Below are positions 5,126 through 61,960 of a stretch of DNA of 64,000 bases, in pieces (position 1 is the stretch's first letter; each line of letters begins with the position of its first letter). Made by a program: the position numbers and the translations under genes. Source of the stretch: Botryllus schlosseri (taxonomy: Eukaryota); NCBI GenBank assembly GCA_051294905.1, contig CM119379.1, forward strand, positions 26,908,001 to 26,972,000. The letters are read 5' to 3'. The notes under the pieces are model-generated. The model worked only from the letters and a program-made list of their open reading frames with translations, had not been told where the DNA came from and searched no databases.

Positions 5126-5735
5126 TAGGGTTGTAATCAAGTTACAAAGTTACAAGTTACAAGTCAAGGCGAGTCATTTTCAACTCACCGCCGAGTCAAG
5201 TCCAACTCGGGGAACAAAGTCATAGTGTTGAGACTCGAGTCCTATAGTCCAAGTGATAGTGTTCCTGTTCACTGTTTATTATCGAGTTCAAGACAGGCCC
5301 AAATCACTTTTCTGAAACTCTTGGGTGATATCGAATGACTTGTATTTATAATATATTCATTTTTCTCATTATTAACACGTTCATTCAACTGATAAAAAAC
5401 AGTTTATGCGCCTATTTTTCAAACATCGCTCTTGATACACGAGTCTTAAATCAAGTCATATATAAGGTCTCGAATGATATGACTTTGTCGAGTCATACGC
5501 TATGACTCGTGTACAAGTTGAGTTAATACATGAAGTGACTCAATTTGAGTCGAGTCCTTTGCCATTTTGAAAAAACGACTCGAATCATTGCATTTTGGGG
5601 AATTGATTCCGAAGTTTTAAGATGATTTGGTTGCGTTACGAGTCAATCTAGGATCTGAATGACATTCTGGAAGTCGTGTACTGGTCGTTCTAGATTCAAG
5701 TCAGCGCATTACATCCAGTCACCACCAGTCCTCTA
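5126..5735. mobile_element. MITE with gactcga/gagtc subterminal repeats
   Basis: End tagggttgtaa(t/c)caagt; partial copies at 8221-8501, 28583-28867 and 29950-30120. Confidence 0.65.
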
Positions 5736-6739
5736 GAAAAAAGGATCATATGAAGCCAAAGAAATGAGGTATTTAGGCTGAGGAGAACAAGCGGATGATT
5801 GTTACATTACAGGTTCATTTTATGCATTCAGAATTAACCGTTATGTTGATTCCCAAACACGCATGAACAAGGAACATTGAATGAACAATTGTGGTGATTG
5901 CATAGGATTACTGTAATTAGTTTGCTTATGTTCGTTTCTCAGTTGCTCATGTCTGTGCTTGCGCGTTTATGTTTTGGTTTCAAGCTGATCGTAGCCAAAT
6001 TTTACCTAACTAAAACCTAGAAAGATATCAAGCAAAAACAGAGCCATCGTGAGCCTCGAACGATAATGGTGAACAAGTTTATGGTCTTTTACCGACATCT
6101 AGCGGTCGCGCCTACCGTCGCAAAGCAGCACGTTCTCACAGCGACAACTCGCGTGATCGATATAATATGATTTTATGATGCCCTTCGAGATATGCTTCTT
6201 ACTCAGAACCCTTGGGGCTGCGTGAACAGCGTCTAGATATCCCAGAAGCAAACAAGAACAATTTCTCGTGTTATCGTTTCCATTATCTGATGATGTACTC
6301 TGGACTGCTGTTCGCAGGTTCAACTTCCTCCGAATGGGAATAAGGTGAAAATGGTCTAAATCGGTGTTCTTTAACCTTTTCGCGCTCGTACCCTGTGAGC
6401 TTTCAATAAAATTTATCGTGCCCCTGTCCATTATCAGGCCGCCATCAAACTATGGTCTTGTCCTCCGTGGGTTTCTACACAACTTATGATTTGGGGCCAA
6501 CCCGTCACAAACGTTCCGTGAAAACCGGGTTTTTCAGGCACTGCAACAAAAGGTCAACTCAGTATCAATTCCCCGTTTTTATGTCTGTTACTGAAACTTT
6601 AAATTGTCCTATTTTTCGCATATGAAAATATGGTAAGTACTTGGTCTCCGAAAGTTGTCGTAACAAAATATATGATTCCATGAATCTGATGAAATTATTT
6701 CTGCAAACAATTGAAAGTTAGTAAAATTTCTGCCCTCAC

Positions 6740-6994
6740 CTGACTTCCCTACTCCGTCAGCTCCGATCACTAAAATATTCAAATCTCCGTCGATCTTTGT
6801 GAGATCACACGCCTTTATCTTGTCGCAAGCTTGTTCGCTGCTGACATCACTATGATCGTTGCACGCGTCATCGAAGTAAGCACGCGGAGTTCGCTCCAAT
6901 TCCGGACTCGAAGGAGTCGAAAATGTTTTCTCCAGTTCTTCAAACCACGGACTCACGGAATTCACGGAACCGGAAGAGTACGATTTTCTCGCCG
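6740..6994 (-). CDS. RERG-family GTPase, coding exon 3 (Ser-rich linker plus P-loop G1)
   Basis: acctag acceptor, G|GTGAGG donor, 255 nt, phase 1/1; ends LNILVIGADGVGKS (GxxxxGKS); phase matches exon 902-958. Confidence 0.9.
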
Positions 6995-7284
6995 CTAGGT
7001 TGAGATAAAGAGGTAATTTATACAGCGTCGCAAAAATGCAAACCTTGGTGAGCATTGAATAGTTTTGTCTAAAAAACTGAAAATTGTCACGTTCCAAGTA
7101 GTCTACAATCATAACCACAGATTTTACCCAAAAGCTTGATTGCATGCAGTACATGAAATAATCTCGATATATAATTAATATGTATAGATATATGAATTGA
7201 ATATATGGTTATTGTAATTACGAGACATTTTCTTGTGGGAAAGATGGAATTGGAACGCGTCCTGCGATTCGAACTCGAACTCAC

Positions 7285-7432
7285 CCGAATGCGGCCTGCT
7301 GGCCACCGACTGTTCGTGGGTCCTCCTCAGTCTCGGTTGCGAAAATTTCTTCTGCAGGTTCGGCGAGGAGTCGCTGTTCGATTCGAATTCGGCGATTCCG
7401 AACCTCCCAGAATTTCTGTTAACCGACGAGTC
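7285..7432 (-). CDS. RERG-family GTPase, coding exon 2 (N-terminal extension)
   Basis: cttcag acceptor, G|GTGAGT donor, 148 nt, phase 0/1, open (DSSVNRNSGRFG...ASRPHS); phases fit both neighbouring exons. Confidence 0.8.
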
Positions 7433-7476
7433 CTGAAGTATATAGTGAAAATTTGAGGGCCTGAAAGTGTGTAAAG

Positions 7477-8212
7477 CAGGGGTGTTGAACTCAACTTGCG
7501 TCATGGGCCGGATTTAAACCTACAAATCGCTCGCGGGACGCACCAGTCAAATGATTGCAAAATATTACCTCAAAACTCATGACATTGATTTTAATTTGGA
7601 TACTTCATAATCAAGCCTATACACACGATGGTATATCACATTCTATTACGGCTCGTAGGGGTTCTATTCTTGCTACACTTGTATTCGCAAACAATGGAAT
7701 TATGGCAATAATACGACGACTGGGGATGGAATAGAGTTATAAACGGCTAAAACCGAGCGTTTTGACTTATACAATAGCTGACCACGGATATTTGAATTAC
7801 AATTCCGCTTAACCATTCTATTATCCATGTAACCTGCATATAAAGGTATCGCATCATTGGCGTTTTCGCTTCTGTGAATAACTGGTTTTGGGTCCTTTTC
7901 CCATAAAACTCCGTATGATTTTTTTGCCTTCTCGAAATTGGGTGTTAACGTGAACGACTTGTTCCTAGTGGTGACTGAAGTAAAATCACAACACCGCTGT
8001 CGGATGGCTATGGCCTATGAACAAGAACATACTGTATTTTCTGTCGTGAGGGATTATTTAATTGACGTATTTCTTACTAGAAATAACAACATTTGCTGTT
8101 AGAAATATGCTCGATAATACACGCATTTTTCAATCTACTCAAAATTGCTTCGTGGGCCGGATGCCGCCCGCGGGCCGTATGCCGCCCGCGGGCCGTATGT
8201 TTGACACCCCTG
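7477..8212. mobile_element. Non-autonomous hAT (Buster/Charlie-type) element in GTPase intron 1
   Basis: TIRs caggggtgttgaac / gtttgacacccctg; perfect 8-bp TSD GTGTAAAG; 18-bp tandem duplication at 8161-8198. Confidence 0.9.
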
Positions 8213-8644
8213 GTGTAAAGTGAAGAAAATTACTTTATTATGAATGCGAGGCATTCAATATCAACCAAGTGGTGTAGTAAAAATGTGGGCTGAAGAGGAT
8301 TGAACTCGAAAATGAACAGAAAACACAATGACTTGGACTCGGACTCGAGTCTCAACATTCTGACTCGCACTCGCTCCTTTGAACCCTGACTCGGACTAGG
8401 ACTTGACTCGGAGTTGAATTTAAAATGACTCGACTTGACTCAAAACTAGAAAAGTAGAATTGACTTGTGACTCGGGACCTTACGACTTGGTTACAACCCT
8501 ACACAAGAGTATTGTGGATGTGAAAGCAGCGACGTCCTTCTACTCAATTGCAAGTATATAGGAGTCGCGTTTTACAAGCCTTGTCAAGACTACTTCAAGT
8601 GGAAGTAGAAAATAAACTTGTTAAAAGCACTTAAGTAATATAGT

Positions 8645-8775
8645 TTCAATTAAATAGTATATTCATATTGCAATGAACCCGAATATTTTCGGCTGACACT
8701 CGTCAGGGGTAATAGTCAGCAACTAGTTAAGAATTCAAAAGAACATCGTATATCAACAATCGTATCGCAAACTAT
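8645..8775 (-). mobile_element. Hammerhead-bearing short repeat, subfamily 1 (retrozyme / Penelope pLTR-like)
   Basis: Shares ctcgtcaggggtaatcgtcagcaactag...aacattgtatatcaacaatcgtatc with copies at 42110, 49812, 55660, 58258 and 63195. Confidence 0.7.
8675..8721 (-). ncRNA. Minimal type I hammerhead ribozyme, intact catalytic core; predicted cleavage between 8681 and 8680
   Basis: 5'-GCUGAC UAUU ACCC CUGACGA G UGUCAGC C GAAA AUAU U C GGGU-3': core CUGANGA, G10.1-C11.1, GAAA, palindromic AUAU helix III, UC cleavage site, helix I ACCC/GGGU. Confidence 0.8.
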
Positions 8776-9212
8776 GATGTCACCAGCATTTTCCAAATCA
8801 CAAAAGATGAAGCATTCATTGACACGGGGAATTTGAAAAATTTATTGCCGTTCGAAACCAGATTTCACGGACATTATGACGTCTGTTAGTTGTCACCGTA
8901 CGATCGCCTGGCTCTTAAAGCTATAAATGAGAACAAATTCTGAAAGATGATGCAATTTGGGCGTCCTCGGAGGACATTTTATATTTCTTGAAAATGGGGG
9001 ACAAAACCTAGTAAAAGAGGACATTCGGTAACCCTGCAGTTTCTATTCTGCCAAATCCAAAGTCTGACTACCTGAAGAAGTATAATATGTTAGTGCCTTC
9101 TTACTGACCACCTCTATGTATGACCAATGCCTACAAACCGTTTACTTTCTACTTTACAAGACAAAAGTTGAGTAAGTCAGAGAAATCTCGAACGTACGAG
9201 GCTAGAATTTAC

Positions 9213-9506
9213 CTGCCATCCTTCGAAGGCATTCTTGACTTTACTCGCAAAATTGGCGATGAACGACAATGGCCTTTTGACGCTGCCGCTGCTGTTGCTT
9301 CTCGCGAACGAATGCGACGCGTACGTGGCCGATGCGGGCTCAGTCTGGTAATACCGCGGGATATCCGCCTGGATTCTGCGGTACCGCTTCATGCCTCGGC
9401 TCGCCGGGACGCTGCCTTGGTAGGCGAGGTCGAATACGGCTTCGGAATGACGGCGCGGGTTGCCGGAAAAGTAGCGGCCATGATCGCTGTCTTGAGCCGC
9501 GTTCAT
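9213..9506 (-). CDS. RERG-family GTPase, coding exon 1 (start codon, N-terminal extension)
   Basis: ATG at 9506 with an in-frame upstream TAG; 98 codons, GC-rich relative to flanks, ends WQ|GTAAAT (phase 0) matching exon 2. Confidence 0.78.
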
Positions 9507-28243: not shown

Positions 28244-29187
28244 CAGAGTTGTGCAAACTAGCGGATTTTCAAATGAGAAACTAGAACTAGAACTAAACAC
28301 TTTTCAAACCTAGCAAGTAGAACTAATCCCTTTTTAAAACACGTAACTAGAACTAGAGCTGGAACTAGTCACTTTTCATAACTCGCAGCTATGACCAAGG
28401 AACTAGAACTACGACCCTTAAAATCCGCAACTTTGTAAATAAAACATAACAAACTGGGTTCTTAAGTAGAGCTGAGAAATATGGGAGATTGGATCGGCAT
28501 TCCAAAAGAACTAGAACTACTAACTTTCGAAATTCCGCAACTAGAATTAGAACTACTCACTTTTCAAAACACGCAACCAGAAAGTGAGAAAATTTGATAT
28601 ATTATTAATGCGAACCATTCAATATCACCGAGCAGAGTTAAAAAAGTGGGTTTAGGAAGACTTTAACTGGAAACTGAGCAGTCAACACAATGACTTGGAC
28701 TCGGACTCGAGTCATAATACCATGACTCGGACTCGATCCTCTGTTCGCTGACTTGGACTCGGACTTGACTCGGTGGGAATTGAAAATGACTCGACTTGAC
28801 TCGAGTCAAAAATATAAAAATGAGATTGACTTGTGACTCGGAGCCTTGTGACTTGGTTACAACCCTGGTTCTTAATTAGAGCTGAGAAATATGGGAGATT
28901 GGGTCGGCATTCCAAAAGAACTAGAACTACTAACTTTCGAAATTCCGCAACTAGAATTAGAACTACCCACTATTCAAAACACACAACCAGAACCATCGAA
29001 CTAGGACTGCGACCCTTAAAAAGACGCAACTAACGAACTAAAACCCAACAAACCAGATTCTTAACTAGGTGTAAGAAATATCAGAGATAGAATCGACGTT
29101 TCAAAATAACTAAAACTACCGCTAGAACTAGAATTAAAATTACTGAAACAAGTAGTTAGTTACTTTATTAGTAGATTGTAAAGTCTG
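28244..29187. mobile_element. hAT-like MITE with internal ctagaact minisatellite, containing a duplication and a one-ended MITE
   Basis: TIR-like cagagttgtgcaaacta / tagattgtaaagtctg; same family as 63276-63495. Confidence 0.7.
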
Positions 29188-55659: not shown

Positions 55660-55921
55660 CTTGAAGAGCTTCTTGAAGATACAGAACTTCAATATGTAAT
55701 TGAATAGTATATTGATATTGAAATGAACCGGAATATTTCGGCTGGCATCTCGTCAGGGGTAATCGTCAGCAACTGATAAGTAATTGGAAATAACATTGTA
55801 TTGTATTTATTGTTGCTATACAATGTTCTTTCCTATTTTCTACCATTTGCTGACGATTACCCCTGACGAGTGTCAGCCGAAAATATTGGGGTTCATTTCA
55901 ATATGATTATACTAATCAATT
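55660..55921. mobile_element. Head-to-head inverted pair of hammerhead repeats (~105 bp arms) inserted into a SINE
   Basis: Arms 55698-55803 and ~55818-55921 are reverse complements; SINE sequence on both sides (55560-55660, 55920-55955). Confidence 0.75.
55847..55894 (+). ncRNA. Hammerhead copy intact except cleavage-site nucleotide (C17 to G); probably inactive
   Basis: gctgacgattacccCTGACGAgtgtcagccGAAAatatTGgggtt. Confidence 0.6.
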
Positions 55922-57215
55922 CTAGGCTTTTGTATGATGCCGCTTACGCAGATCACAAATGGTTGTGATCTTACACTGTTTGCACTTCTATACTGAACAG
56001 TTTTCAATTTTTTTGTGGCAAAACTAGACCTAGCATGCTTAATTTCTACTTGATTTGAAAACAGCTACTTCTGATTGTAATTGAGTGGAAATTTACGACC
56101 GCATACTTTAAGTATACTCAAAGTGGAAATTGCAGTAACAAAGTACTTCTATTTTTCCAGAGCACGCAAAGTAGGTAATGCCTGTTTGCAATACTTACTC
56201 AACTAGTCGTCATTTTACACTATAATCCCATTAGTACTTTTACGGTATGTAAGCAAAACTACTTTGCCATTGCAGTAGCTGCAAAATATATTTTCGAAGA
56301 ATGTACCTATTGGTATAGTGGTCATTGTGCGTTGGTCACGAAGATACATCTTGTAATTTCGAAAGCATATTCACCGCAGAGTAGCTTTACCATAATTTGA
56401 GACCGAGAAAAGAGGACACTTTTTTCAAATCGCAAAACTTGTAATATCGGGTGAGAAAACGGGTAATTTGAATTTTTTTACTTAAAATACTGTTGCGTTG
56501 ATTTAAAATTTGAAAAAAGGGTCATTTCTCCAACTGGACTCCCGGAAGGTCCGCTCTATCATCATTTACCTCATGGATGCCTATTTTTATTCATCCTTTC
56601 CGTCCCTGCCGTCGAAATCCACATTTAACGTCATTTATGGCGTTTTTTAAATGCGCCTGTACAATCGCCAGGCTGTCAGGGCTATAAAGAAGGACGAATT
56701 GCGAAAAAGTAGGACATTTGGGCGTCCTCGGAAGACATTTTCGATTTCCTGAAAAAGGAAGACAAATCATCACTCCACGTTAGAGGAACTGCTAAATGTA
56801 TGCGAATCCTCGTCCAGGACCTCTACATGTTATTAAAGCTGCTTACTTTAATACTTTTCAAATCTTTCATTCTCTACTTTCACATGTGTAATTTTGGCAT
56901 GTCTTAGAAACATCGATTTCTATTTGTAATATGGACTAGAAATGTGCGACGTTTGCCTGCATCTTGAATTTGCGTCTCATCGCAATTAGTTTTAACCGCC
57001 ACAGAGTGTTTATCTAGCATTATAGCCGTCAATTTGTTTTATCTCAAGATCTTCCATGCTTACAACTGCTTGTCAAAACCGTAACGACTTTGTTTTACAA
57101 TCGGGTAAATTTCTGGGTTCAGTCTGGTTTGTGATTCTTCCGCATGACGCGGTGAATAGTCTTTTGAACTGTGGAGTCTGACAAAAGCACAAGTTACGAA
57201 GCGTCTCGAATCGCT

Positions 57216-58257: not shown

Positions 58258-58520
58258 TGAAGAGCTTCTTGGAGGTACGGAACTTAAATATACATTCATT
58301 TTATTGAATAATATATTCATATTGGAATAAGCCTGAATATGATCGGCTGACACTCGTCAGGGGTAATCGTCATCAACTAGTAGAGAATTGAAAAGAACAT
58401 TGTGTATCATATATTTACTGATACGATGATTGATGTACAATGTTTTTTCAGTTGCTGACGATTACCCATGACCAGTATCAACCGAAAACAATCGGGTTTA
58501 TTTCAAAATGAATATATTAT
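58258..58520. mobile_element. Head-to-head inverted pair of hammerhead repeats (both cores mutated)
   Basis: ggctgacactcgtcaggggtaatcgtc ... gctgacgattacccatgaccagtatcaaccgaaa. Confidence 0.7.
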
Positions 58521-59422
58521 TTAAAAGAATGCCAGAAATCTGGCAACATCTCTGGATAACCTCGAAGCATGAAGGGTAATACTGAATGCTTCTCAGGTCT
58601 GATCTGACCAGACTTGGACAAATAGATAATTGTATTTTTTTTTGTAATTGTCATTTTCGATCGTGACAAAGTGGATGTTAACCCAACTACGAATAAGACT
58701 TGAACAATTTCATGATTCTAGCTGTCCAATGAGACAAATTCAATTCGATTCAATTAATTGCTAACAATTTCTTCATTTCAGGACACCACAAGATTGCGAC
58801 ACAATGACGGATAGGAAGGAGTCGAAACGACTTGGAGTAGTCTTCGGAATCGGACACCTACCTGGCACAGGCGATTAAAAAGGAGGCATGCACACTGAAT
58901 GAAAAGTAAACGAAGTTAATATAAAGGACATGTGACAAAAAACGTGACATGTCTCGGAAGGCGAGATCGATATGTTAAGTCGTGGTCCGGTAAACCAGAG
59001 GACTAACTATAGTATTGATTATGATGAAATGCCAGTAAACTAATTTGTGAAATGTTTCTGCTCCCATTCTGATTTTAGCATAATTTCTGGATTTCATGAA
59101 AATGCCACACTAGAACTGCATAGTGGGAAACGAGCTAAGCTCGGTGTACACTGTACAGACATTTGCCATTCTCGCGCTTATTATGAGGATGAACTTCGAT
59201 TTGGTATGAAGTGAACTTTATTTTTGTTTTGTTTCTTTCTAATTGGGAATTGAATTCAATTCACGACATTTTGTGAATCCAGTTATTCTAATTCTAATCT
59301 GATTTGGTAAAAATTGTGTAACTATAATGCTAGTTATAATCTAATTTGGAAATTTTCTAGGTGTCCAACTGTGACTGGTGCGCCCATACCGCGATCAGCT
59401 TTCACTGCTCAAAGGTATAGAA

Positions 59423-60695: not shown

Positions 60696-61960
60696 GCATA
60701 GAAGCTGACGGCTTCCTCTGACCACGGCGAGTAGTTAACTATACAGGTCAACCCAGTTTGAAGGGTTGGTGTAATTTGAGACACTTTTAAAATCATTGCC
60801 CTTGAATTTACAAAGCTGACTAATCGTTTAACCTTGCGATTGTCGTTTTAGGGATTAAAACCTAATTTACTGCACCGTTTCGTCCAGTCATACGCGAAAA
60901 ATTCAAAGTCCAAACAAGAGGCCGGCTGAGTCACGTACTTTTGCAAACCTTGTCATGACAGCAAACACAGTCGGAGCCTCGTGTTGCTGCATGGTGTGGA
61001 TGTCAAAGCGGAACGGGGGCTGACTCACGTTGTTAAGGGTGGAAACCGTTTAGTTCGGCCAGAGGAACGACTACACTGTTGGAAAGTAAGGGACTTCCAT
61101 TGCTACCACCCCATACAAAATGAAACACGGTATCTTCACGCTTGTAACCATACAAGTACTGGAACAGTATTTCACCAGCAATTCGCCAAGTCGTCGAGCA
61201 TTTCCAATGGACATTGTCCGCATTATCGCAAAATACACAATATGCATATTCCTGAATTTCTTCGACTGGAATAATTCCCTCTCTTTCTCATCAGTAGCGC
61301 AAGTCATTCAGAATACACCAGTCAAATTACAATTCATTCGAAAAGCTTTGAGTGAAATAAATTGAGCAATATGAAAATATTCTTGGATTATATTTTGAAG
61401 TTCTGTACTTCTAAAAGCCTATTTCAATACCTGTCCACATTCAAGTCAAAATATAGGGGCAGCTTCAATTGAATAAATACTTTAGTCCTTTTGAGTTCCG
61501 TAATAAAGGACACATTTTACAAATCGCAAAACTTATAAAATCGGATGAGAATACGGGTTGATGCTGTGTTGACTAAAAAAAGTTCATTTTCCAAATCGAA
61601 TCCCGGAAAATCAGATCTAGGGTTATTTTTAGTCATCCTTACCGTCATTTATGCCGTTTTTCAGTTCTGTCAGTACAATGACCCTGCTATCAAAGTTATA
61701 AAGAAGGACATTTGGGCGTCCTGGGAGGACATTTTCGATTCCTTGAAAAATAAGGACAAATCCTCCTAAAGGAAGACGTAGGGCGAAGTAGGGCGACCCT
61801 ACTATATAGTCAGCCCTTGAGAGTTCCTAGCCACGGAGTGAACTACCGATACATACCATATTCAATTTCATCGATTGTCCTTTTATGTAATCTCTCGTTC
61901 CTTTTCATTCAGTGTACAACTTACAGTGTATGCCTCTTATTTAGATACTTTGTTCTAAGC

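What the first reader, a model, noticed from the sequence alone, without database searches (positions are those of the whole stretch)
8675..8721. Intact minimal type I hammerhead ribozyme in sense orientation inside a GTPase intron
Seen (minus strand): ACCC-CUGACGA-G(UGUCAGC)C-GAAA-AUAU-UC-GGGU. Known: this is the full hammerhead core (C3-A9, G10.1:C11.1, G12-A14, A15.1:U16.1, H17). Minimal type I motifs with a palindromic 4-nt helix III characterise Penelope-like element pLTRs and metazoan retrozymes and often cleave as dimers. It is the only intact copy among about 12 relatives here and lies on the transcribed strand of intron 1, 532 nt after the donor. Inference: the pre-mRNA may self-cleave, or the copy is simply young.
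Basis: partly seen in the sequence, partly recalled or inferred. Interest (0 to 1): 0.85.

Follow-up and report, generated by a model that had tools for sequence, protein, structure and literature searches.

The report
Penelope retrotransposon hammerhead fragment in intron
The motif is a real hammerhead ribozyme sequence, but it is one of over 3,000 identical copies left by a young Penelope-like retrotransposon. This copy is most likely an inert 143-bp remnant in a GTPase intron, and the notable point is that this retrotransposon clade builds the ribozyme's second helix from an upstream box.

Summary
Observation confirmed. Window 8720-8677(-) reads GCUGAC-UAUU-ACCC-CUGACGA-G-U-GUCAGC-C-GAA-AAUAUU-C|GGGU, with the predicted cut at 8681/8680.

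It lies in sense orientation in intron 1 of a Ras-like GTPase gene. Homology supports this: exon 1 is 9506-9213 and exon 2 is about 7046-6738.

The copy is not special. The 34-nt motif occurs 3,093 times exactly in the 495-Mb genome. It is the consensus pLTR ribozyme of a young Penelope-like element (2,692-bp tandem unit, 848-aa RT plus GIY-YIG ORF, ribozyme 11 nt before the ATG). The window copy is a 143-bp, 5'-truncated, tail-less insertion.

Rfam finds no hammerhead because there is no helix II hairpin. Only G10.1:C11.1 is local. The rest of helix II forms by pairing of "loop II" with a 5-6-nt box 13-15 nt upstream of C3.

Thirteen lineages support this. Three are families in this genome and ten come from marine metagenome or Logan contigs. 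They show 10 different, fully complementary box/anti-box pairs. Helix I, 10.1:11.1, C3-G8/U3-A8 and eight (quasi-)palindromic helix III sequences also covary, which implies action as a dimer.

RNA-seq shows no cleavage-site signature. Self-cleavage of the pre-mRNA is unlikely. The scan had already noted this pseudoknot on other DNA of this genome.

The parts
8647..8789 (-). 5'-truncated, tail-less insertion of a Penelope-like element. It comprises the last 143 bp of the unit: the 3' UTR/pLTR with the ribozyme and the first codons of the next ORF.
   Evidence: Local alignment to the full-length unit L052 2672-2814, with 133 of 143 bases matching. It ends at the family's short terminus ...TATTTAATTG.
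8715..8720 (-). Upstream box GCUGAC. It supplies the 5' strand of helix II (positions 10.2-10.7) by pairing with 8692-8697.
   Evidence: Ten different, fully complementary box/anti-box types occur in 13 lineages, always 13-15 nt before C3. 97% of cells are paired, all 6 pairs change on both sides, and 0 of 500 shuffles reach this.
8711..8714 (-). Spacer UAUU between the box and helix I. The consensus is GAUU. The G at 8714 is nearly invariant across lineages and is mutated to U in this copy.
8707..8710 (-). Helix I, 5' strand ACCC. It pairs with GGGU at 8677-8680.
   Evidence: Helix I covaries across lineages, with 13 different sequences of 2-7 bp.
8700..8706 (-). Catalytic box C3-A9, CUGACGA.
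   Evidence: Other lineages keep YUGANRA, with C3-G8 or U3-A8. The U3-A8 variant is known from PMC4209133.
8691..8699 (-). G10.1, a one-nucleotide linker U, the anti-box GUCAGC (11.7-11.2) and C11.1.
   Evidence: The 10.1:11.1 pair is G:C, U:A or A:U in relatives.
8681..8690 (-). G12-A13-A14, the palindrome AAUAUU (15.1-15.3 and 16.3-16.1, which forms helix III only between two ribozyme copies) and C17. The predicted cut follows 8681.
   Evidence: There are eight different helix III sequences in 13 lineages: seven are perfect palindromes and one has a central U-U mismatch. H17 is C, U or A.
8677..8680 (-). Helix I, 3' strand GGGU. It would be the first nucleotides of the 3' cleavage product.
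9213..9506 (-). Exon 1 of a Ras-like GTPase gene: ATG at 9506 and donor CAG|GTAAAT at 9213|9212.
   Evidence: Homologues are P0121 (67% identity), P0123 and P0124.
7047..9212 (-). Intron 1 of the GTPase gene. It contains the retrotransposon fragment in sense orientation.
   Evidence: The same homologues align to the exons on either side. The acceptor ...ccaag|GTT at 7047|7046 is inferred from reading frame and homology, and was not confirmed by RNA.
6738..7046 (-). Exon 2, ending in the P-loop LVIGADGVGKS. The donor is TCAG|GTGAGG.
   Evidence: P0123 carries a Pfam Ras domain.

Best explanation
**What it is.** The 47 nt are the hammerhead ribozyme motif of a Penelope-like retrotransposon (PLE). 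The window copy is a dead-on-arrival, 5'-truncated 143-bp insertion. It landed by target-primed reverse transcription in sense orientation in intron 1 of a Ras-like GTPase gene.

**In the intact element** (2,692-bp units in head-to-tail arrays), the ribozyme sits in the pLTR, about 100 nt after the stop codon and 11 nt before the next ATG.

**Layout shown by comparison.**
- Helix I has 4-5 bp.
- The core is YUGANRA...GAA.
- One local pair, 10.1:11.1, is followed by a single linker nucleotide.
- A 5-6-nt anti-box pairs with a box 13-15 nt upstream of C3.
- There is no helix III hairpin. A 6-8-nt palindrome starting at A15.1 takes its place.

**Inferred mechanism.**
- The box/anti-box helix stacks on 10.1:11.1 and serves as a 7-bp helix II.
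- The single linker crosses its deep groove, as loop 1 does in an H-type pseudoknot.
- The 3-4-nt spacer ties the far ends of helices I and II together.
- Two ribozyme copies pair through the palindrome to form helix III. Each then cuts after H17.

**This copy.** An isolated copy such as the one in this intron has no partner in cis and a very weak palindrome (AAUAUU). It is most likely catalytically silent and neutral for the host gene.
For: **Repeat and element**
- The motif is the consensus of a repeat.
- There are 3,093 exact copies in the genome.
- The ORF has RT (YVDD; Pfam RVT_1) plus a C-terminal GIY-YIG-like block.
- More than 9,000 candidate ORF copies exist, many of them identical.
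- The tandem unit places the ribozyme at 59-92 and the ATG at 103.
- Insertions end either at the short terminus or with a further 34-bp tail. They carry inverted 5' copies and variable 10-12-bp duplications. This is as described for PLEs (PMC8557442, PMC11167929).

**Structure**
- 13 lineages share the layout, with 40-64% protein identity.
- They show 10 box/anti-box types, all fully Watson-Crick. Own pairs average 6.0 of 6, against 2.6 of 6 when box and anti-box come from different lineages.
- On the alignment, 97% of cells in the pseudoknot helix are paired and 6 of 6 pairs change on both sides. No shuffle of 500 reaches this. Sliding the partner columns gives 27-39% paired.
- Three families inside this genome already differ: GCUGAC/GUCAGC, ACUAAC/GUUAGU and CGUGCC/GGCACG.
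- Box pairing (-7.4 kcal/mol) beats the competing core hairpin (-5.4 kcal/mol).

**Precedent**
[quoted passage not shown] 4).

**Window copy**
- It is a 143-bp fragment.
- It lies in intron 1, in sense, by homology.
Against: - Cleavage was not measured for this architecture.
- Rfam's hammerhead models do not score it, or any of the 13 lineages.
- The lowest-energy monomer folds are inactive.
- RNA reads from four runs pile up on the pLTR but are 92-100% chimeric with other sequence. The tool reports no place where molecules begin or end.
- The only hint is 6 reads in run X15 that run into adapter directly after C17.
- The AAUAUU helix III is extremely weak (-0.2 kcal/mol).
- Within the genome, variants of the anti-box are uncompensated: 66 GCCAGC copies exist and only 2 have a matching box. 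Dispersed copies therefore decay neutrally, and only between-lineage comparison carries signal.
- Coaxial stacking of the pseudoknot as 'helix II' is inferred from topology, not shown.
Confidence: 0.85

Rival explanations
1. The intronic copy is an active ribozyme. It cuts the GTPase pre-mRNA 532 nt into intron 1 and so affects the gene's expression or splicing.
For: - The core, helix I, box and anti-box are all intact, in sense orientation, in an intron.
- Thousands of other transcripts carry the same palindrome and could pair in trans. pLTR fragments are present in RNA at depth of about 70-110 in three of the four runs and about 5-8 in X15.
- Conserved intronic hammerheads exist in amniotes (PMC3088659).
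Against: - There is no helix III in cis and no second sense copy in the gene.
- The AAUAUU duplex is worth about -0.2 kcal/mol.
- Single min-HHRs were inactive in vitro (PMC4209133).
- The copy is one of 3,093 identical motifs and shows no sign of selection.
- Its only change within the ribozyme hits a nearly invariant G.
- Cleavage inside an intron need not change the mRNA.
Confidence: 0.05
2. The motif is a conserved folded RNA of these elements but not a working nuclease. It would serve another step, such as pairing of two element RNAs through the palindrome, recognition by the RT, or translation of the ORF that starts 11 nt downstream.
For: - In a Poseidon PLE, core mutations that abolish hammerhead cleavage did not affect insertion in vitro, and no RNA-seq reads ended at the cleavage site (PMC11167929).
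- Here too there is no end pile-up.
- Insertion termini lie 30 or 64 nt downstream of the cleavage site, so the template RNA was not cut there.
- Reported in vitro activity of PLE min-HHRs is low (PMC4209133).
Against: - Every catalytic nucleotide is kept across 13 lineages, while all helices change sequence.
- The C3-G8 to U3-A8 double change preserves a catalytic tertiary pair.
- H17 is never G.
- This pattern is what selection for cleavage predicts, not selection for a mere fold.
Confidence: 0.1
3. The ribozyme works as a monomer. The pseudoknot stabilises the core enough that the short palindrome is not needed as an intermolecular helix.
For: [quoted passage not shown]
Against: - A 6-8-nt palindrome cannot fold back on itself.
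- Palindromy is kept through eight different sequences, which only makes sense for pairing between two copies.
- The A15.1:U16.1 pair needs a helix III.
Confidence: 0.06
4. Chance resemblance: a transposon consensus that happens to contain CUGANGA...GAAA.
For: - There is no Rfam hit.
- CTGANGA-N-GAAA occurs about 4 times by chance in a shuffled window.
Against: - The position is the same (just upstream of the ATG, in the pLTR) and the layout is the same in 13 lineages down to 40% protein identity.
- All helices covary.
- The link between PLEs and hammerheads is established (PMC4209133).
Confidence: 0.01

Closest known systems
Minimal hammerheads (min-HHR) of Penelope-like elements (Cervera & de la Pena 2014, PMC4209133; Luense, Weinberg & Breaker 2017, which I could not read here)
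   Same: - Type I order of elements.
- Location in the pLTR of an RT plus GIY-YIG element.
- Helix I of 4-5 bp.
- G10.1:C11.1 pair.
- One unpaired nucleotide at the base of helix II.
- An effective helix II of about 7 bp.
- No helix III hairpin, but a palindrome that requires a dimer.
- U3-A8 core variants.
- Thousands of dispersed, mostly truncated copies.
   Different: The described min-HHRs have helix II as a 6-8-bp hairpin between A9 and G12. Here only 9 nt lie between A9 and G12. The 5' strand of helix II sits upstream of helix I, so the helix is a pseudoknot. The unpaired nucleotide follows 10.1 instead of preceding it. Descriptors and Rfam models built on a hairpin miss it.
[quoted passage not shown] 2011, PMC3088659, Figs 2 and 4)
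   Same: Stem II is reduced to a single pair and continued by a roughly 6-bp pseudoknot. The partner strand of the pseudoknot lies next to stem I, and the pseudoknot holds stems I and II side by side.
   Different: In that ribozyme the 3' tail after 10.1 pairs with loop I (type II, bacterial or metagenomic, with a normal helix III, active as a monomer). Here the strand before 11.1 pairs with the 5' tail before stem I. This is the mirror image, in a type I, dimer-dependent, retrotransposon ribozyme.
Non-circularly permuted hammerheads, types SGC and CSG (Eckert et al. 2023, PMC10085705)
   Same: The hammerhead core is kept while the strands are connected in an unusual order, so that pseudoknots are unavoidable. 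A roughly 3-nt linker joins one side of stem I directly to one side of stem II.
   Different: Those permute three intact blocks (C, G, S). Here the block order is the ordinary C-G-S, but block C itself is split: its stem II strand, except 10.1, is moved upstream of stem I. That paper assumed this case does not occur.
Conserved intronic hammerheads of amniotes (RECK, C10orf118; Rfam HH9/HH10)
   Same: A hammerhead on the sense strand of an intron.
   Different: Those are single-copy, orthologously conserved, monomeric and active. This is one recent copy of a repeat, with no helix III of its own.

Membership tests
Hammerhead ribozyme (type I) | Conserved core: C3 U4 G5 A6 N7 G8 A9, G12 A13 A14, A15.1:U16.1, H17 not G | tested here: met
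   Read directly. The core is kept in all 13 lineages, with C3-G8 or U3-A8 and H17 = C, U or A.
Hammerhead ribozyme (type I) | Three helices around the core, with helices II and III closed by hairpins | tested here: not met
   Helix I is present and covaries. Helix II has one local pair plus a pseudoknot with an upstream box. Helix III has no hairpin, only a palindrome.
Hammerhead ribozyme (type I) | Scores above the gathering threshold of an Rfam hammerhead model | tested here: not met
   No hammerhead hit in the window at gathering score. None at E<=10 on 8400-9000. None in 13 related loci.
Hammerhead ribozyme (type I) | Site-specific self-cleavage giving 2',3'-cyclic phosphate and 5'-OH ends | tested here: inconclusive
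   RNA-seq of four runs laid on the full element shows no begin/end pile-up at C17. The only hint is 6 reads in X15 that end at C17 before adapter sequence. Standard libraries capture such ends poorly.
PLE min-HHR (Cervera & de la Pena 2014) | Lies in the pLTR of a Penelope-like element | tested here: met
PLE min-HHR (Cervera & de la Pena 2014) | G10.1:C11.1 pair, an extra unpaired nucleotide at the base of helix II, palindromic 15.2-16.2, helix I of 4-5 bp | tested here: met
   The unpaired nucleotide lies after 10.1 rather than between 9 and 10.1. L064 has both.
PLE min-HHR (Cervera & de la Pena 2014) | Long (6-8 bp) hairpin helix II | tested here: not met
   Only 9 nt separate A9 and G12. 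The 6 further pairs come from the upstream box.
Penelope-like element (C-terminal endonuclease type) | Single ORF with RT followed by a GIY-YIG endonuclease | tested here: met
   The 848-aa ORF matches Pfam RVT_1 and has YVDD and a YEYRCHCDCGYVGRT...H block. Homologues carry PF00078, and some also GIY-YIG.
Penelope-like element (C-terminal endonuclease type) | Partial tandems forming pLTRs, inverted 5'-truncated copies, an optional 30-40-bp tail, target-site duplications of variable length | tested here: met
   Tandem units of 2,692 bp. Inverted 239-bp arms. Termini with and without a 34-bp tail, and 10-12-bp duplications in L020, L024 and L025.
Non-LTR retrozyme (short tandem repeats with type I hammerheads, circular RNA) | 150-450-bp head-to-tail repeats, each with a hammerhead | tested here: not met
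   The window copy is solitary. Other copies in the window are dispersed or in inverted pairs.
Conserved host intronic ribozyme | Single-copy and conserved at the orthologous intron in related species | tested here: not met
   3,093 identical motifs exist in the genome. Orthologous introns could not be examined with these tools.

The most novel reading that the evidence does not exclude
**Reading.** A whole clade of Penelope-like elements of marine invertebrates uses a hammerhead topology that I found described nowhere in the searchable literature. The 5' strand of helix II is transposed upstream of helix I. This is a non-circular permutation that splits 'block C' of Eckert et al.

**Geometry.** The resulting ribozyme has a 1 + 6-bp pseudoknotted helix II crossed by a one-nucleotide linker, and it acts only as a dimer.

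**Why it could have been missed.** Rfam models and hairpin-based descriptors cannot see it. It may therefore also account for PLE groups reported to lack canonical hammerheads although they have a 'HHR_core' (CUGANGA, 7-17 nt, GAAA), such as the Naiads in PMC8557442.
Probability: 0.4. Interest if true: 0.65.

Novelty: new variant of a known kind. Interest (0 to 1): 0.45.

Why it matters
**For this locus: little.** The copy is an ordinary transposon remnant in an intron and should be annotated as such, not as a host ribozyme.

**For ribozyme biology: the family-level result is useful.**
- It gives a natural, covariation-supported case in which a hammerhead keeps its core but supplies one strand of helix II from outside the three-way junction.
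- It combines two known solutions, a pseudoknot on a one-pair stem II and helix III by dimerisation, in one 60-nt RNA.
- It shows why model-based and descriptor-based surveys undercount hammerheads in retrotransposons.
- It gives a concrete descriptor: box, 3-4 nt, helix I, YUGANRA, N, N, anti-box, N, GAA, palindrome, H. This can be used to re-examine PLE clades thought to lack ribozymes.
- The competing pairing of the anti-box with either the box or the core's own CUGAC suggests a simple on/off switch that could be tested.

Tried and rejected
- **Rfam.** No hammerhead was found over the window (gathering score), over 8400-9000 (E<=10), or over 13 related loci. This reflects the missing hairpins and is not evidence against the motif.
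- **MITE or DNA transposon.** The back-to-back inverted copies first suggested this. I rejected it because the internal sequence encodes RT plus GIY-YIG, the two ends are unequal (a tail on one side only), and the duplications vary in length.
- **Pfam GIY-YIG search of the genome for other PLE families.** It found only one unrelated 298-aa frame.
- **Within-genome compensation.** The GCCAGC anti-box variant has 66 copies, and only 2 have the matching GCUGGC box. This is neutral decay and not informative.
- **Selection on the window copy.** Eight of its 10 differences lie upstream of the ribozyme. However, some of these (the "GATGTTCTTTTGAATTC" stretch) recur in other copies, so they look like subfamily markers. 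I make no claim of selection.
- **RNA evidence for cleavage.** Four RNA-seq runs laid on L052 gave no begin/end pile-up. The reads are mostly chimeric pLTR fragments inside other transcripts. Reads were laid on the full element, so splicing of the GTPase intron was not checked with reads.
- **Luense et al. 2017 (PMC5785218).** The paper is not held. Whether it shows this pseudoknot could not be checked.

Full report
**1. The observation**

On the minus strand the window reads GCUGAC UAUU ACCC CUGACGA G U GUCAGC C GAA AAUAUU C GGGU, from 8720 to 8677. All hammerhead core positions are present. The predicted cut is between 8681 and 8680.

A strict descriptor run on both strands finds this as the only intact copy in the window. 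BLAST of the surrounding 800 bp against the window finds eight further degenerate relatives, several as back-to-back inverted pairs.

Rfam gives no hammerhead match, either at gathering score over the whole window or at E<=10 over 8400-9000.

The monomer's lowest-energy fold is inactive. It pairs CUGAC with GUCAG and CCGAA with UUCGG.

**2. What the repeat is**

The 34-nt motif occurs 3,093 times exactly in the 495-Mb assembly, and the reversed-pattern control occurs 0 times. A 131-nt query has more than 2,000 candidate matches at 93-95% identity.

[quoted passage not shown] That ORF has over 9,000 candidate copies, many 100% identical, and stands in head-to-tail arrays of 2,692 bp.

The unit is laid out as follows:
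- the ribozyme occupies 59-92;
- the first ATG of the 848-aa ORF is at 103;
- the stop is at 2646;
- the next ribozyme starts at 2751.

Insertions end either at ...TATTTAATTG or 34 bp further on at ...GAAGCTCTTC. They often carry an inverted, 5'-truncated copy and have duplications of 10-12 bp of variable length. These are the published hallmarks of Penelope-like elements, including the optional 30-40-bp tail (PMC8557442, PMC11167929).

The window copy aligns to unit positions 2672-2814. It is 143 bp long, 93% identical, lacks the tail, and occupies window 8789-8647.

**3. Gene context**

- Exon 1 runs from the ATG at 9506 to CAG|GTAAAT at 9213|9212.
- Exon 2 ends in LVIGADGVGKS at 6738.
- Exon 1 alone finds a 559-aa protein with a Pfam Ras domain, and two shorter relatives.
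- That protein aligns to exon 1, exon 2 and a third exon at 962-906, all on the minus strand.

This rests on homology. I did not confirm the junction with reads.

**4. The ribozyme's architecture**

Between A9 and G12 there are only 9 nt, so there is no helix II hairpin. Fourteen nucleotides before C3 lies GCUGAC, which is complementary to GUCAGC in the supposed loop.

To test this pairing I took homologues of the ORF at 40-64% identity and fetched their contigs from ENA, Tara and Logan assemblies. I also found two further PLE families in this genome.

Every lineage carries the same layout just upstream of its ATG. The box and anti-box differ between lineages but are always fully complementary:
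- GCUGAC/GUCAGC
- UCUGAC/GUCAGA
- UCUAGC/GCUAGA
- ACUAAC/GUUAGU
- UCAAGG/CCUUGA
- CGUGC/GCACG
- CUGGA/UCCAG
- UCCCAU/AUGGGA
- UACAGC/GCUGUA
- CGUGCC/GGCACG

The box always starts 13-15 nt before C3.

On a MAFFT alignment of 12 sequences:
- the pseudoknot helix is 97% paired;
- all six pairs change on both sides;
- none of 500 shuffles reaches the observed values;
- sliding the partner columns gives 27-39% paired.

A box paired with the anti-box of another lineage gives 2.6 of 6 Watson-Crick pairs on average, against 6 of 6 for its own.

The other elements covary as well:
- helix I takes 13 different sequences;
- 10.1:11.1 is G:C, U:A or A:U;
- the core is CUGANGA or UUGANAA, which is the known C3-G8 to U3-A8 double change (PMC4209133);
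- the stretch after GAA has eight different sequences of 6-8 nt that start with A and end with U. Seven are perfect palindromes and one has a central U-U mismatch;
- H17 is C, U or A.

This pattern is what selection for a working hammerhead predicts. It rules out chance.

**5. How it most likely works**

Shown: the pairings above.

Inferred:
- The anti-box is contiguous with C11.1, and the 5' end of the box abuts G10.1. The box/anti-box helix can therefore stack on 10.1:11.1 as a 7-bp helix II with a nick in its 5' strand.
- The single linker nucleotide would cross the deep groove of 6 bp. This is the classical geometry of loop 1 in H-type pseudoknots (my own knowledge).
- The 3-4-nt spacer joins the distal ends of helices II and I, which lie side by side in the active fold.
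- Helix III can only form between two copies, as proposed and partly shown for PLE min-HHRs (PMC4209133, PMC6765202).

The dimensions match those reported for hairpin-type PLE min-HHRs: 7 bp for helix II, 4-5 bp for helix I, and one unpaired nucleotide.

In family 1 the anti-box can alternatively pair with the core's own CUGAC (-5.4 kcal/mol, against -7.4 for the box). This is a possible off state.

**6. RNA evidence**

Four RNA-seq runs were laid on a two-unit stretch.
- Reads cover essentially only the pLTR. Depth there is about 70-110 per orientation in X13, X17 and X18 and about 5-8 in X15. It rises gradually over the last 400 nt or so of the ORF and is near zero over the rest of the ORF.
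- 92-100% of the reads continue into unrelated sequence, so they come from fragments embedded in other transcripts.
- The tool reports no place where molecules begin or end.
- The only hint is six reads in one run whose insert ends exactly at C17, followed by adapter. This is too weak to count.

The result matches the experience with a Poseidon element, where no reads ended at the cleavage site and ribozyme mutants still inserted in vitro (PMC11167929). The insertion termini, 30 or 64 nt beyond the cleavage site, also show that the 3' ribozyme is not cut in the RNA that gets copied.

What the cleavage is for remains open. It could release the ORF RNA from array transcripts, aid translation, or do nothing essential.

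**7. The window copy**

- It keeps the box, spacer length, helix I, core, anti-box and palindrome.
- It has one change in the ribozyme: G to U at 8714. That position is G in 12 of 13 lineages, for unknown reasons.
- It has no partner copy in the gene.
- Its palindrome is the weakest of all (AAUAUU, -0.2 kcal/mol).
- Dispersed copies evolve neutrally.

I conclude that this copy is a recent, inert remnant. Self-cleavage of the pre-mRNA is unlikely, at about 5%.

**8. Comparison with what is known**

Hammerheads in PLE pLTRs have been known since 2014, and dimer dependence is known as well. Pseudoknots that hold stems I and II together are common. [quoted passage not shown] Non-circular permutations are known (PMC10085705).

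What I did not find in the searchable literature is this combination: a type I, dimer-dependent PLE hammerhead whose helix II 5' strand lies upstream of helix I. Luense et al. 2017 could not be read.

Craig et al. note PLEs with a hammerhead core that fit no stem/loop descriptor (PMC8557442). These may be of this kind. I did not test that.

The scan had already noted the pseudoknot on other DNA of this genome (s1-231978, s1-281515) and at this site (s1-300908). I tested it independently with sequences from other lineages.

**9. Verdict**

- The locus itself is ordinary.
- The family-level architecture is a new variant of a known kind.
- Interest: 0.45.

Noticed in passing
L063:543-588 (+): A related PLE from a metagenome contig has a match to the histone 3' UTR stem-loop (Rfam RF00032, 36.7 bits, above gathering score). 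It lies directly after its hammerhead and before its ATG. This may be a way to form non-polyadenylated 3' ends.
   Followed up: no
window 8714 (-); alignment A2 column 9: The nucleotide directly 3' of the box is G in 12 of 13 lineages, although it is outside every proposed helix. It faces the A/U linker at the far end of the pseudoknot. It is U in the window copy.
   Followed up: partly
L052:45-69 and window 8720-8700 (-): In family 1 the box plus one spacer nucleotide (CUGACGA) repeats the catalytic heptamer exactly. The anti-box can therefore pair with either, which could be a switch or a trace of origin by duplication.
   Followed up: partly
L072, L074-L083 (own genome: C37, C23, C2, C11 and others): The genome holds at least two more young PLE families (853-aa and 856-aa ORFs, in tandem arrays) with the same ribozyme layout but different helices. 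The hit list shows further ORF lengths (806-876 aa), which hints at more families.
   Followed up: partly
L065 (Logan SRR29245597) versus L078 (own genome): The ribozyme of this Logan contig is identical to that of the genome's second PLE family. That run probably comes from the same or a very close species.
   Followed up: no
L052:72 and L052:2764, run X17: About 40-50 reads join the ribozyme from position 72 onward to an upstream sequence that lacks the box (TTCTTTCTGTTCTTTCCCCCTGACGAGTGC). This looks like one degenerate copy inside a well-expressed transcript of that sample.
   Followed up: no
window 55698-55921 and 58303-58524: Two head-to-head inverted pairs of degenerate pLTR fragments. 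They are typical PLE inverted 5' copies and look like miniature inverted-repeat elements at first sight.
   Followed up: partly
window 5162-5271, 28662-28866, 56607-56766, 61710-61777: Sequence flanking the PLE fragment in the intron (the parts at about 8300-8500 and 8845-9020) is itself repeated elsewhere in the window at 75-88% identity. Other unclassified repeats therefore surround the insertion.
   Followed up: no
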